The position numbers and the translations under genes are program-made. A DNA stretch of 64,000 nucleotides from Macrostomum lignano (lineage: Eukaryota). A model generated the notes under the pieces. It did not search any database and had not been told where the DNA came from. It saw nothing but the letters and a program-made list of their open reading frames with translations. Of the stretch, positions 16,623 to 19,600 are shown piece by piece. The DNA is taken from the NCBI GenBank assembly GCA_002269645.1, contig NIVC01002870.1:69300-133299 (forward strand). The letters are read 5' to 3'. The stretch's first letter is position 1. Every line of letters begins with the position of its first letter.

Positions 16623-19600
16623 CTAACCCGAAGTTGGTGGCTGTGACACTTCGCCACCTCCACCGCCCCTGGGTGCCTCCGCATCCGCTGCCTCCGCCCG
16701 CTTCCGCCCGTGACGCCGGCGCCGCTGCCGCCGCTGCCGCCGCTGCTGTCGTTGCAGTCGTCGAAGACGCCGACGCTCGCGACACTTCTCGTCCTGGCAC
16801 CGGCGACGGCGCCGGCCTTTCTTCCCGCGACCGCGGCGTCGGCCGCTCTTGCGGCCCGGCCTGCCACGGCCGTCGCTGACGCCATCGCCGCTAGGCGAAG
16901 CTTCGTCGCTGACGGCCCGCCGCAGGGGGTCCGTGGATTCGGCAGCGTCGGTGCCGAACAGGCGGAGCTCGTGGCGCGAACTGGCCGCTGCCGCTGGCGA
17001 CTTGCCGTCCTCGGCCTCGAATAGGACTGGGCGGCCCTGCTGGGGTGCGGGGTGCCTGTCTCAGTGCCTGTCTCAGTGCCTGTCTCAGTGCCTGTCTCAG
17101 TGCCTGTCTCAGTGCCTGTCTCAGTGCCTGTCCACAGCTGTAGCCCAAGCAAAAATCAGAGCCCACAACAGCTTACCTTGTCCTTCCAGTCCGCCACGCA
17201 AGCCGAGTTCAAGGGGGTTCCGTCGGCCCGCAGCCAGCAAAGTCTTCCGTCAGTGCCCTGGAAATCCAGGGATTTGAGGGATACCGCAATATTTTGTATC
17301 GATATCGATTTTCTTGATCAATCGATTGAAAAATGCAGTCGGCTCACAGGTGCCCCGTCAGTGCCCGGCGGTCCGCGCCGTCCTCGCTTGCCCCTCTCGC
17401 CCGGTTCTCCCTGCCGGGTTTAGTTTTTTATTAAATTAAAAAAAAGAACGTTCATATTCCTGTAGCCTACTCTCAGTAGAAATATTTGGGTTTTCTAGAC
17501 AAAATATCAGAATAGTTGAAGAGGAGAAAGTAACAGACTAGAAAATAAGCTCACTTTTGCTCCGGGCAATCCAGGTTGACCCTGAATTTTGAAAGGATGG
17601 AGCGTAACATTTCAGCGGATGAAGCTGATGAGTTGGGGAAAGTACGAGAGATTAAATTTGACTGAAACCAGTGTAAATTTTGAGACTTGGCAGTAATTAT
17701 GCAACACGCAATTATTTCTTGTGAAAGCACTGCGATAGCAGAAATTCGAAAAATGTCTCTTACAGGCAGTCCAACGTGGCCAGGTTCCCCCATGGCACCC
17801 TTGAGAGAGTCAGTTATGCGATATGACAGTTTAATGAGGATATTATTGCCCCGAAACTTCGAAGGCTGTGCGAATATCGCGAATTTTATTGCGGCAAGTT
17901 TCATAATCTGCTGCAACGCTAAGCCGATTATTTTCTAAGAATTTCCAAGCGGGAACGGGCGCTTCTAATGGGGACTGAGAATGGCCCGCTGCTGCCGTGT
18001 GGTTTACGATGAGGATCTGCGCAAATCCGCAACGCACAGCACTGAGGCAGCAAACTTTTCTCTGCTGCCAAGCAGACAGCAGCAGGTGGTAGACATTTCT
18101 GCAGCAAGATATCTCTCTGCACTGAGCAGACACCCCAATTGCAGTTGCAATTTCTGCTGGAAACAGGAGACAGCAGAGACTGTCATACTCGATTTCAGAC
18201 TCGCTACTAGATAAAGTCATTATCCTGCAAACTTGGATCGTATAAAGTTCTTTCGCAACCACAAGCAGAGTCACAGAGCAACTCCTGTCACTGCGTTGTT
18301 AACGCAGCTCAAAGCTGCTACCCTATCGCAGCTGGGTGTACTTTATTCCAGCTTAGTAGCTTTTTTACTTGCGTACTAACCGCGGCCAGCCCGGCTTAAC
18401 TTGCAGATGCCGGGATAAAATTACTCGGTCGGTGACTTCCAGTCAGACTGGGCTGATGACCCCCAATTTTACACCCCAACTGGCCTGGTGACCCCCAATT
18501 TTTACACCCCAACTGGCCTGGTGACCCCCAATTTTACACCCCAACTGGCCTGGTGACCCCCAATTTTACACCCCAACTGGGCTGGTGACCCCCAATTTTA
18601 CACCCCAACTGGCCTGGTGACCCCCGATTTTACACCCCAACTGGCCTGGTGACCCCCGATTTTACACCCCAACTGGCCTGGTGACCCCCGATTTTACACC
18701 CCAACTGGCCTGGTGACCCCCAACCCTACTGGGCCGGTGACCTCCAACCCTACTGGCCTGGTGACCCCCAACCCTACTGGGCCGGTGACCTCCAACCCTA
18801 CTGGGCCGGTGACCCCCAACCCTACTGGGCCGGTGACCTCCAACCCTACTGGGCCGGTGACCCCCAACCCTACTGGGCCGGTGACCCCCAACCCTACTGG
18901 GCCGGTGACCCCCAACCCTACTGGGCCGGTGACCCCCAACCCTAATGGCCCGGTGACCCCCAACCCTAATGGCCCGGTGACCCCCAAACCCTACTGGGCC
19001 GGTGACCCCCAACCCTAATGGCCCAGTGACCCCCAACCCTAATGGCCCGGTGACCTCCAACCCTAATGGGCCGGTGACCCCCAACCCTACTGGGCCGGTG
19101 ACCCCCAACCCTAATGGGCCGGTGACCTCCAACCCTAATGGGCCGGTGACCCCCAACCCTACTGGGCCGGTGACCTCCAACCCTAATGGGCCGGTGACCT
19201 CCAACCCTAATGGGCCGGTGACCTCCAACCCTACTGGGCCGGTGACCTCCAACCCTAATGGGCCGGTGACCTCCAACCCTAATGGGCCGGTGACCTCCAA
19301 CCCTACTGGTCCGGTGACCCCCAACTCTACTTAGCCGGAATGAAAGCCAATCCCAAACCTGCGGTTTTCAGTGGCCCCAATCGCGGTTTGCAAAACTCAC
19401 CTCGAGCCCCGGTCGACCGGGAAAACCCGGTGAGCCGGTGACACCCATGGCTCCCTTGTCACCTTTGGGTCCGGAAGGACCGGCTGGTCCGGGGACCTGC
19501 AAGAGAGGGGATGGCGTGGAGTAGTGCAATACTTAGGAAGAGGGGGGATTAATGAGCTTTTAATTCTCTCACAAGTTTCACATTATTTCCGTCAGTGTCC

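What the first reader, a model, noticed from the sequence alone, without database searches (positions are those of the whole stretch)
16623..17257. MACIT collagen with a novel ~138-aa C-terminal extension containing a 57-aa polybasic, two-cysteine block
Seen: after the conserved NC4 exon (C-x4-DG-x-P-x4-C-x3-W) the gene does not stop but splices (donor 17176, NAGNAG acceptor 17040/17037, phase 0) into a 417-nt exon absent from the ORF track. Codons at 16868-16698 read [57 protein letters not shown] (34 of 57 are R/K), flanked by acidic and Ala/Gly-rich spacers. Established: vertebrate collagen XIII/XXV end a few residues after this NC4 motif, and basic tails such as those of VEGF/PDGF act as heparan-sulfate matrix-retention signals. 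Inference: a trimeric, furin-shed collagen bearing three highly cationic tails, possibly for matrix anchoring or adhesion, or as a precursor releasing cationic peptides through its many RxxR sites.
Basis: partly seen in the sequence, partly recalled or inferred. Interest (0 to 1): 0.75.

Follow-up and report, generated by a model that had tools for sequence, protein, structure and literature searches.

The report
Flatworm membrane collagen with polybasic tail
The window holds a real gene of the flatworm Macrostomum lignano for a membrane-anchored (collagen XIII-like) collagen, and its last exon adds a 137-residue, extremely arginine-rich tail with two cysteines; this is a longer version of a short basic tail already known in invertebrate relatives, and its function is untested.

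Summary
On the minus strand, exon 17257-17177 (…[22 protein letters not shown]) splices with canonical GT-AG sites and phase 0 into a terminal exon, 17036-16623. The 57-residue block at 16868-16698 has 29 R, 5 K and 2 C.

The window is Macrostomum lignano contig NIVC01002870.1. Two near-identical gene copies carry transcriptome-derived GenBank proteins (PAA92413.1, PAA86789.1) with exactly this junction and tail. The window copy's own annotation (PAA54699.1) stops early through a 4-nt mapping artefact, but a 17-exon model gives an intact 534-aa ORF.

The architecture fits a MACIT collagen:
- an N-terminal membrane anchor;
- RRLRR followed by a Cys pair;
- interrupted triple helices;
- the C-x4-DG-x-P…C…W motif.

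An older syntenic paralogue (39% identical) has the same intron and keeps GRRRRRC-x2-E-x-C beyond what composition explains. The flanking spacers are not conserved.

Novelty is smaller than claimed. Invertebrate MACITs such as C. elegans COL-99 already have a ~30-residue extension with RRKR.

The most likely reading is an extracellular polycationic tail that binds anionic matrix and is clipped by furin-type proteases. That function is inferred, not shown. No relatives were found outside M. lignano.

The parts
40387..40641 (-). Exon 1. Start ATG at 40641, short basic cytoplasmic N-terminus, a single hydrophobic anchor (residues ~27-47), a Cys cluster and the heptad-like [16 protein letters not shown].
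   Evidence: The Kyte-Doolittle 19-residue peak is 1.74 at residues 27-29. K/R residues lie on the N-terminal side.
32758..32854 (-). Exon 2. Reads [15 protein letters not shown]|[17 protein letters not shown](G): juxtamembrane furin-type site, Cys pair and start of the first collagen segment. The acceptor is a NAGNAG (32857/32854).
   Evidence: Compare HsXIII RRRREAPKTSPGCNCPP and COL-99 RRVRNSCMCPAGPPG.
19401..31041 (-). Exons 3-13 (31041-31016, 30863-30834, 29851-29840, 29727-29635, 26127-26029, 23691-23674, 21324-21229, 20902-20831, 20757-20677, 19617-19573, 19496-19401). These are interrupted G-X-Y segments and non-collagenous linkers. The introns are filled with minisatellites.
   Evidence: Pfam Collagen matches in 5 stretches.
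17764..17799 (-). Optional 36-nt exon [12 protein letters not shown] with AG/GT borders. It is intact in all copies, is skipped in the deposited models, and is homologous to …KTGHVGLP of the paralogue.
17555..17581 (-). Exon 14, GQPGLPGAK.
17348..17410 (-). Exon 15, [21 protein letters not shown]. This is the last triple-helical exon and aligns with HsXIII [23 protein letters not shown].
17177..17257 (-). Exon 16 (NC4 motif): [27 protein letters not shown].
   Evidence: Aligned to HsXIII and COL-99.
17037..17176 (-). Intron 16 (140 nt). Donor gtaagc; (GGCACTGAGACA)x6.8 at 17052-17132; NAGNAG acceptor cag|cag| at 17037-17042. If the intron is retained, the frame reads VSCCGL then stop.
   Evidence: The other copy, L001, has two more repeat units and the same splice sites.
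16869..17036 (-). Tail residues 1-56: net-acidic spacer predicted to be disordered ([12 protein letters not shown]…[14 protein letters not shown]).
   Evidence: pLDDT below 50. Not conserved in the paralogue (z 1.9, dN 1.0).
16698..16868 (-). Tail residues 57-113: the 57-aa polybasic block. It consists of a Gly/Arg-rich stretch, C80-x4-C85 (16799-16797 and 16784-16782), then an Arg/Gln-rich stretch. It has 7 R-x-[KR]-R sites.
   Evidence: Residue order is conserved with the paralogue (score 135 against 85.7±8.9 in shuffles, 0 of 5000; dN 0.48, against 0.41 for NC4).
16677..16790 (-). Predicted long helix, tail residues 83-120, starting between the two Cys.
   Evidence: pLDDT is 93-97, but the alignment has only 3 sequences.
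16720..16746 (-). Perfect (CAGCGGCGG)x3 coding repeat = QRRQRRQRR. It lies in the stretch that is an insertion relative to the paralogue.
16623..16697 (-). Tail residues 114-137 ([24 protein letters not shown]) plus the stop TAG at 16625-16623.
   Evidence: Not conserved in the paralogue (z -0.8).

Best explanation
The 414-nt stretch is the true terminal coding exon of a Macrostomum lignano type II transmembrane collagen of the MACIT kind (collagen XIII/XXIII/XXV, C. elegans COL-99).

The protein is anchored by one N-terminal membrane segment. It can be shed at a juxtamembrane RRLRR site. At the far, extracellular end of each of its three chains it carries a 137-residue non-collagenous tail with three parts:
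- a disordered, net-acidic spacer;
- a Gly/Arg-rich polycation ending in GRRRRRC-x4-C;
- an Arg/Gln-rich helix.

The tail sits where other invertebrate MACITs have a ~30-residue extension with an RRKR site, so it is an enlarged form of that extension.

The most likely mechanism is that the trimer's cationic tips bind polyanions (sulfated glycosaminoglycans, or anionic cell or matrix surfaces) and so tie the collagen to the matrix. The Cys pair could lock the chains or form a small loop. The many R-x-K/R-R sites would let furin-type convertases trim the tail and so regulate binding, as in the C-terminal heparin-binding region of extracellular superoxide dismutase.

Shown: exon structure, frame, transcript-derived models, MACIT-type architecture, and conservation of the core in a paralogue.
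Inferred: extracellular location, polyanion binding, disulfides and cleavage.
For: - Sequence and splice sites.
- An intact 534-aa, 17-exon ORF in the window.
- The window is 100% identical to NIVC01002870.1.
- Deposited proteins of two ~99%-identical copies contain the junction and tail. PAA86789.1 has a tail identical to the window's.
- That annotation was made from StringTie/TACO transcript assemblies, RNA-seq and TransDecoder.
- The tail has no Met, so it cannot be a separate gene.
- The paralogous locus L002 has the same downstream BAR-domain gene, a phase-0 intron right after NC4, a 426-nt terminal exon, and the core RRGRG…GRRRRRC(K/Q)(N/D)E(R/K)CR.RRR.
- The core's residue order is conserved beyond composition (0 of 5000 shuffles, z 5.5). 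Its dN (0.48) is close to that of NC4 (0.41), against ≥1.0 in the flanks, with dS saturated.
- MACIT features: anchor; RRLRR + C-x4-C + PPG against RRRR…CNCPP; 48% identity over 50 residues to the HsXIII C-terminus and a collinear alignment; the COL-99 extension with RRKR.
- A confident helix is predicted after the Cys pair, and the spacer is predicted disordered.
Against: - No read-level RNA-seq, proteomic or binding data were seen here.
- With near-identical copies it is unknown which copy is expressed. The window copy's own deposited model is truncated, which I attribute to an artefact.
- Among the recent copies the tail shows 4 non-synonymous changes to 1 synonymous. That gives no sign of constraint, although only one of the four (R510Q, its second-last residue) lies in the basic block, at its edge.
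- Part of the block is a perfect triplet repeat absent from the paralogue. The spacer and C-terminal end are unconserved.
- The exhaustive profile search found the tail only in M. lignano, so there is no cross-species support.
- With 7 strong convertase motifs the tail may not survive secretion at all.
- Arg-rich alignments are easily inflated by composition.
Confidence: 0.55

Rival explanations
1. The tail is translated but is mostly a neutral by-product. GC-rich triplet-repeat slippage (CGG/CAG/GCG/GGC runs) inflated the short ancestral invertebrate extension into a disordered Arg/Ala/Gly-rich appendix. It is tolerated, and perhaps simply clipped off at the ancestral dibasic site, with no specific role of its own.
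For: - A perfect (CAGCGGCGG)x3 repeat inside the block, absent from the paralogue.
- The paralogue versions P0005 and P0121 differ by frame slips that interconvert R-, A- and G-runs.
- The spacer and C-end cannot be aligned between paralogues.
- 4 non-synonymous to 1 synonymous changes between recent copies.
- Nothing similar outside M. lignano.
- The genome is very rich in tandem repeats.
Against: - The GRRRRRC-x2-E-x-C-R-x-RRR core, the preceding RRGRG and the acidic-then-basic order are kept across a duplication old enough to saturate synonymous sites.
- Arg codons differ synonymously between paralogues while the residue is kept.
- The exon-intron structure is kept.
Confidence: 0.25
2. The tail is a pro-region. 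Convertases cut at the R-x-K/R-R sites and release one or more free arginine-rich peptides, for example the Cys-loop plus helix, which act on their own (antimicrobial, adhesive or signalling). The acidic spacer would neutralise the cation until cleavage, as in defensin or eosinophil major basic protein precursors.
For: - 7 R-x-[KR]-R and 15 R-x-x-R motifs.
- The acidic stretch immediately before the polybasic stretch is seen in both paralogues and, in miniature, in COL-99 ([12 protein letters not shown]).
- MACITs are proven furin substrates, and a C-terminal site was proposed for COL-99.
Against: - No peptide has been detected.
- Cleavage at the C-terminal site is unproven even in COL-99.
- The spacer's net charge (about -5) is far too small to neutralise about +31 (counted from the sequence).
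- A membrane collagen is an unusual carrier for a secreted peptide.
Confidence: 0.12
3. In vivo the main product lacks the tail. Either transcripts retain intron 16 and stop after …[11 protein letters not shown], giving a vertebrate-like short end, or this particular copy is silent, and the tail-bearing models come from minor or chimeric transcripts.
For: - Intron retention would stop after 6 codons here and after 3 (VSC) in the paralogue.
- The window copy's deposited CDS does not reach the tail.
- I saw no read counts.
Against: - Two independent copies and the paralogue all have transcript-derived models spliced at the same place.
- The truncation in the window copy is reproduced exactly by a +1/-3 nt misplacement of exon borders around a deleted 27-nt exon, which implies a non-canonical TG…TT intron.
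- The paralogue's conservation of the core argues that it is translated.
Confidence: 0.08

Closest known systems
C. elegans COL-99 and other invertebrate MACIT collagens (Tu et al. 2015, PMC4678570)
   Same: - Type II membrane collagen with a juxtamembrane furin site followed by a Cys pair.
- Interrupted triple helices.
- C-terminal C-x4-DG-x-P…C…W-K motif.
- A non-collagenous extension beyond the W that has an acidic stretch and then a basic convertase-type site (COL-99: [34 protein letters not shown]).
   Different: - The extension is 137 residues rather than about 30-33.
- It has 35 Arg rather than one RRKR, plus an extra C-x4-C pair and a predicted 38-residue helix.
- Cys spacings in NC1 (C-x4-C against C-x-C) and NC4 (P-x4-C-x3-W against P-x3-C-x0-1-W) differ.
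- It is found in a lophotrochozoan, a group in which MACITs were reported as not found or lost.
Vertebrate collagens XIII, XXIII, XXV
   Same: The overall architecture is shared. There is 48% identity over the last 50 residues of collagen XIII up to the DG-x-P motif, and the alignment is collinear.
   Different: Vertebrate chains end at W-(N/H/Q)-K with no extension. The flatworm protein is shorter (534 aa) and has fewer collagen exons.
C-terminal heparin/matrix-binding region of extracellular superoxide dismutase (from my own knowledge, not tested here)
   Same: A short disordered polybasic cluster next to a Cys that makes an interchain disulfide. It binds heparan sulfate and collagen, and furin removes it to regulate retention.
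   Different: An unrelated protein with a much shorter cluster (about 6 basic residues). This is a functional analogy only.
Basic retention tails of class-3 semaphorins, VEGF-A and PDGF, and the Arg/Pro-rich N-terminus of PRELP (PMC2806584, seen)
   Same: Extracellular arginine/lysine-rich, unstructured segments that bind glycosaminoglycans. Several have convertase sites and a nearby Cys.
   Different: There is no sequence homology. None sits at the tip of a transmembrane collagen trimer.
FACIT collagen COL1/NC1 cysteine knot (G-x-C-x4-C) (from my own knowledge)
   Same: Two Cys four residues apart on each chain of a collagen trimer.
   Different: In FACITs the pair directly follows the triple helix. 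Here it lies about 106 residues after it, inside a polybasic stretch, so the defining position is not met.

Membership tests
MACIT collagens (XIII/XXIII/XXV, COL-99) | Type II topology: no signal peptide, a short cytoplasmic N-terminus and one membrane segment. | tested here: met
   There is a single hydrophobic peak at residues 27-47 (KD 1.74). K/R residues lie on the N-terminal side, and the collagen domain is C-terminal. No dedicated topology predictor was available.
MACIT collagens (XIII/XXIII/XXV, COL-99) | Juxtamembrane coiled coil (NC1) that nucleates the trimer. | tested here: inconclusive
   [16 protein letters not shown] follows the anchor and resembles LQGRVAALEEER (XXIII) and TRISTLEKRIDQL (COL-99). 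No coiled-coil predictor was run.
MACIT collagens (XIII/XXIII/XXV, COL-99) | Conserved furin site in NC1, followed by two Cys and the start of COL1. | tested here: met
   HRRLRR|[26 protein letters not shown], against HsXIII RRRREAPKTSPGCNCPP and COL-99 RRVRNSCMCPAGPPG. The Cys spacing is x4 instead of x1.
MACIT collagens (XIII/XXIII/XXV, COL-99) | Ectodomain made of interrupted triple helices. | tested here: met
   Pfam Collagen matches in 5 stretches. G-X-Y exons are separated by non-collagenous linkers, including [11 protein letters not shown], which resembles the NC3 stretch MVDYNGNINEAL.
MACIT collagens (XIII/XXIII/XXV, COL-99) | Conserved C-terminal region with two characteristically spaced Cys and W-x-K. 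| tested here: met
   [27 protein letters not shown], against [23 protein letters not shown] and [24 protein letters not shown]. Identity is 48% over 50 aa to HsXIII, E 1e-8 pairwise. The second Cys and the W are shifted by 1-3 residues. The human and worm sequences were taken from a machine-read supplement.
MACIT collagens (XIII/XXIII/XXV, COL-99) | Reciprocal best database hits are collagens XIII/XXIII/XXV (the criterion of Tu et al.). | tested here: inconclusive
   With a chimeric query, the best hits outside Macrostomum were MARCO and otolin, driven by G-X-Y. The NC4+tail profile was too short to reach other phyla.
MACIT collagens (XIII/XXIII/XXV, COL-99) | Homotrimer at the cell surface, with the ectodomain shed by furin. 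| not testable with these tools
   This needs expression and biochemistry.
MARCO / class A scavenger receptors | C-terminal SRCR domain after the collagenous stalk. | tested here: not met
   Pfam finds only Collagen. The tail matches no family.
Nematode-type cuticle collagen (UniProt label 'Col_cuticle_N domain-containing') | Col_cuticle_N domain. | tested here: not met
   The Pfam scan of the 563-aa copy at E≤1 lists Collagen only.
FACIT-type cysteine knot | G-x-C-x4-C immediately at the end of the triple helix. | tested here: not met
   The C-x4-C pair is at tail residues 80 and 85, about 106 residues after the last G-X-Y.

The most novel reading that the evidence does not exclude
Flatworms retained the MACIT collagen that was thought lost in Lophotrochozoa. 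In Macrostomum the short ancestral basic extension was turned into a dedicated, convertase-regulated polycationic 'sticky tip': three Arg-rich helices held by a Cys pair. This tip would either anchor cells (for example at neuromuscular or epidermal attachment sites) to sulfated matrix, or be released as a free cationic peptide. That would be a matrix-binding module not described for any collagen.
Probability: 0.12. Interest if true: 0.6.

Novelty: new variant of a known kind. Interest (0 to 1): 0.35.

Why it matters
1. It places a gene with MACIT-type architecture in a flatworm. The reference survey did not find MACITs in Lophotrochozoa and inferred loss, so the family's history needs a small correction.
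2. The function of the highly conserved MACIT C-terminus is unknown, as is that of the invertebrate extension with its unproven furin site. An exaggerated version, in an animal where transgenesis and RNAi work, gives a handle to test whether this end is a matrix-binding, protease-regulated module.
3. It corrects a truncated gene model in the M. lignano annotation.

None of this is a major surprise. The protein is already deposited and the functional ideas are untested.

Tried and rejected
- First protein search with the poly-Arg tail included found nothing, not even the 97%-identical deposited protein. The word index appears to have been swamped by low-complexity words. A query without the poly-Arg stretch found it at once.
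- A third search with an NC4+spacer profile returned only P0121, so it gave no view of other species.
- The exhaustive profile search returned only three M. lignano clusters plus one spurious bacterial hit.
- A metagenome scan for the tail matched 600 pattern stretches, none confirmed.
- The PDB sequence search and Pfam found nothing for the tail.
- dN/dS among the three recent copies rests on too few changes to be informative.
- Gene identifiers Mlig008898, Mlig031885 and Mlig000791 appear in no searched paper text and not in the supplements of one expression paper. A planarian matrisome paper does not mention transmembrane collagens.
- My early guess that the GC-rich exons meant lamprey was wrong. 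The organism is M. lignano.
- The alternative acceptor inside the 12-mer repeat (ACAG near 17056) has no support. Neither the deposited models nor paralogue conservation use that frame.
- A separate trans-spliced downstream gene is rejected because the tail has no Met.
- No fold search was run, because the model is one helix plus disorder.
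Full report
**What is in the sequence**

On the minus strand the window has a series of short G-X-Y exons with AG/GT borders. The last three are:
- 17410-17348: [21 protein letters not shown].
- 17257-17177: [27 protein letters not shown], with donor gtaagc.
- 17036-16623, after a 140-nt intron that holds a (GGCACTGAGACA)x6.8 repeat and ends ccccagcag.

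That last exon reads [12 protein letters not shown]…[82 protein letters not shown] and then a stop.

The missing start codon explains why a start-to-stop ORF list does not show the exon. It also means the tail cannot be a gene of its own. The region is about 73% G+C and is open in several frames, so the ORF alone proves nothing. The support comes from related sequences.

**Organism and transcript support**

A search without the poly-Arg stretch hit a 544-aa Macrostomum lignano protein over the whole query (P0001 = PAA92413.1). Its sequence runs …ACVADWKDK|[12 protein letters not shown]… through the complete tail, with four substitutions.

Window positions 7358-50698 are 100% identical to GenBank contig NIVC01002870.1 of assembly Mlig_3_7. 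Two further loci of the same assembly, L001 and L004, are collinear at 92-99% identity and have the same neighbours. M. lignano is a hidden polyploid with a redundant assembly.

- The L004 protein (P0124 = PAA86789.1) has a tail identical to the window's, with no nucleotide difference in the exon.
- Mapping P0001 onto L001 gives 18 GT-AG exons. The last intron uses the same donor and the distal AG of the NAGNAG, which corresponds to 17036 here.
- The GenBank annotation of this assembly was derived from a genome-guided transcriptome (StringTie, TACO, RNA-seq, a de novo assembly, TransDecoder).

The junction is therefore transcript-derived. I did not see the reads themselves.

**The window copy's own annotation**

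Its deposited protein (P0123 = PAA54699.1, 386 aa) follows the same exons to …GRPGLE and then reads [27 protein letters not shown] and stops at 17358.

The window copy lacks about 210 bp that in L001 contain a 27-nt exon (GRPGLHGKQ). Extending exon 13 by one base at its donor and exon 14 by three bases at its acceptor does two things. It reproduces that peptide exactly. It also reproduces the annotated CDS end, through a +4-nt frameshift and an intron with TG…TT ends. This is what results when a transcript from another copy is forced onto this contig. I therefore read the truncation as an artefact.

With canonical sites, the 17 exons give an intact 534-aa ORF that includes the tail. It is 546 aa if the optional 36-nt exon 17799-17764 is included.

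**Is it a MACIT collagen?**

Tu et al. 2015 define MACITs by three criteria: type II topology, interrupted triple helices, and a conserved C-terminal region with two Cys. Their supplement gives these C-termini:
- HsXIII: …[23 protein letters not shown]
- HsXXIII: …PCPVGPDGLPVPGCWHK
- HsXXV: …PCQLGPDGLPMPGCWQK
- COL-99: …[51 protein letters not shown]

The flatworm protein has the following:
- One hydrophobic segment (residues 27-47), with the basic residues on its N-terminal side.
- A heptad-like stretch, then HRRLRR|[18 protein letters not shown]. Compare RRRREAPKTSPGCNCPP in collagen XIII and RRVRNSCMCPAGPPG in COL-99.
- Five Pfam Collagen stretches separated by linkers.
- The motif C-x4-DG-x-P-x4-C-x3-W-K.

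Pairwise, its last 50 pre-tail residues are 48% identical to collagen XIII (E 1e-8), and the alignment is collinear.

The Cys and Trp spacings differ by one to three residues. A proper reciprocal-best-hit test could not be done: the chimeric query pulled out MARCO and otolin through G-X-Y similarity. I therefore file it as MACIT-type, with that one criterion open. It is not MARCO, because there is no SRCR domain. The UniProt label 'Col_cuticle_N' is not borne out by Pfam.

Tu et al. did not find MACITs in Lophotrochozoa and inferred loss there. This gene argues against complete loss.

**How new is the tail?**

The same paper states that invertebrate MACITs extend about 30 residues beyond the W. 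It also notes a C-terminal RRKR, absent from mammals, whose cleavage 'remains to be proven'. So a non-collagenous, basic, convertase-type extension is a known invertebrate feature. What is unusual here:
- the size, 137 against about 33 residues;
- 35 arginines;
- an added C-x4-C pair;
- a predicted long helix.

The tail matches no Pfam family and no PDB chain. An exhaustive profile search of 1.8 billion representatives found it only in M. lignano. A metagenome scan found nothing.

**Evidence for constraint**

M. lignano has an older paralogue, on locus L002 (contig NIVC01000143.1), represented by P0121 = PAA89638.1 and UniProt A0A1I8FAH0 = P0005. It is 39% identical over 261 residues and has the same downstream BAR-domain gene. 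It has a phase-0 intron just after …CIASWRAASAK and a 426-nt terminal exon, again without Met.

Its tail has the same layout as the window's:
- a spacer ending in an acidic run (DNDNDDDSRDG);
- GRRRKKRRGRGGGRKRRGRRRRRCKNERC;
- RQRRRQRRLERQRLRQEAR;
- an Ala-rich end.

Nei-Gojobori estimates, window against paralogue; synonymous sites are saturated (pS 0.6-0.9):

| Region | dN |
|---|---|
| NC4 | 0.41 |
| Basic block | 0.48 |
| Spacer | 1.02 |
| C-terminal end | 1.41 |

Many Arg-Arg pairs use different codons.

A composition-preserving shuffle test:

| Region | Result |
|---|---|
| Basic block | real score 135, shuffles 85.7±8.9; 0 of 5000 reach it; z 5.5 |
| NC4 | z 15 |
| Spacer | z 1.9 |
| C-terminal end | z -0.8 |

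So the Gly/Arg stretch, the Cys pair and the start of the Arg-rich helix are conserved in residue order, and the flanks are free.

Evidence pointing the other way:
- Among the three recent copies the tail has 4 non-synonymous and 1 synonymous change, against 6 and 7 in the rest of the gene. The counts are too small to interpret. One of the four (R510Q) is the second-last residue of the 57-aa block; the other three lie outside it.
- QRRQRRQRR is a perfect 9-nt x3 repeat, and it lies in the stretch that is an insertion relative to the paralogue.
- The two paralogue versions differ by frame slips in CGG-rich DNA.

Repeat slippage has clearly shaped the tail.

**Structure**

AlphaFold2 was run on the three-sequence alignment. 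It predicts a disordered spacer (pLDDT below 50), a flexible Gly/Arg stretch, and one confident helix (pLDDT 93-97) from between the two Cys to the AEAADAE segment (tail residues 83-120). The alignment is shallow, so this is only a pointer. The helix has no clear hydrophobic heptads, so a coiled coil is unlikely.

**Mechanism**

The collagen domain must be lumenal and there is only one membrane segment. The tail is therefore extracellular, at the membrane-distal tip of a trimer.

The best-supported reading is a multivalent polycationic tip that binds sulfated glycosaminoglycans or other polyanions. A Cys pair may link the chains. Several convertase sites allow the tip to be trimmed. The arrangement of an acidic stretch before a basic site is shared with COL-99. 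Functional analogues, from my own knowledge, are the furin-processed heparin-binding C-terminus of extracellular superoxide dismutase and the basic tails of class-3 semaphorins, VEGF and PDGF.

The rivals are:
- a largely neutral repeat-driven expansion;
- a pro-region that releases free cationic peptides;
- a minor isoform, with the main product ending after NC4 (intron retention gives VSCCGL-stop here and VSC-stop in the paralogue).

**Verdict**

MACIT-type identity is well supported (about 0.8). The functional story is plausible but untested (about 0.4 for polyanion binding).

This is a new variant of a known kind, already present in databases as a hypothetical protein, and of moderate interest.

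Noticed in passing
window 17358-19401 (junction 19401→17581): The GenBank CDS of this very copy (PAA54699.1, BOX15_Mlig031885g1) is frameshifted by +4 nt after …GRPGLE and stops at 17358. Shifting the donor by +1 and the acceptor by -3 reproduces it exactly and implies a non-canonical TG…TT intron. It looks like a transcript from another copy that was mis-mapped. The model should be corrected.
   Followed up: yes
window ~17677 (against L001 26165-26378): This copy lacks about 210 bp that in the two sister copies contain a 27-nt exon (GRPGLHGKQ). The loss keeps the reading frame.
   Followed up: yes
window 17764-17799 (-): A 36-nt exon-like segment ([16 protein letters not shown] borders) is intact in all copies and matches …KTGHVGLP of the paralogue, but the deposited models skip it. 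It is probably an alternative exon.
   Followed up: partly
window 17037-17176; L002 10100-10358: If the last intron is retained, the frame stops after VSCCGL here and after VSC in the paralogue. That would give a short, vertebrate-like C-terminus. Whether such an isoform exists is unknown.
   Followed up: no
window 17052-17132: The 12-mer repeat in the last intron differs in copy number between gene copies (6.8 here, two more units in L001). The splice sites are unchanged.
   Followed up: partly
window 32854-32860 (-): There is a second NAGNAG acceptor at exon 2. The sister copies read E-RRNPQ, where this copy has CAG|CAG and the model starts at RRNPQ.
   Followed up: no
window 16887-16892 (-), tail residues S49-G50: A Ser-Gly pair sits inside an acidic context ([13 protein letters not shown]), which resembles a glycosaminoglycan attachment consensus. 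This is pure pattern recognition and was not tested.
   Followed up: no
window 1-64000, e.g. 2281-8024, 24100-25860, 26365-28477, 33991-40367, 41006-42387: The density of minisatellites is extraordinary. Nearly every intron of the collagen gene holds an array, including 6.4 kb of an AGAT-based repeat in intron 1 and 5.7 kb of a 23-mer downstream. This fits the published figure of 15% simple and tandem repeats in this genome.
   Followed up: partly
window 1365-1432: An interstitial run of (CTAACC)x11.7, the complement of the TTAGGG telomere repeat.
   Followed up: no
window 286-771 (-), 12934-13362 (+), 45788-47236 (-), 58503-59072 (+): Neighbouring genes are RMI1 N-terminal domain, BAR domain, an RRM protein with a long Q/P/H-rich tail, and a CCCH + RING zinc-finger protein (RNF113/CWC24-like). 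The order RRM - collagen - BAR - RMI1 is found at all three recent copies, and the BAR gene also lies downstream at the older paralogue. This points to block or whole-genome duplication.
   Followed up: partly
L002 10494-10790; proteins P0005 and P0121: The two database versions of the paralogue's tail differ by frame slips in CGG/GCG-rich DNA, which swap Arg-, Ala- and Gly-rich readings. In P0005's frame the end contains …TPPTEEN, which recalls …QPPTSG here and …RPPVTD in COL-99. Which frame is real is unresolved.
   Followed up: partly
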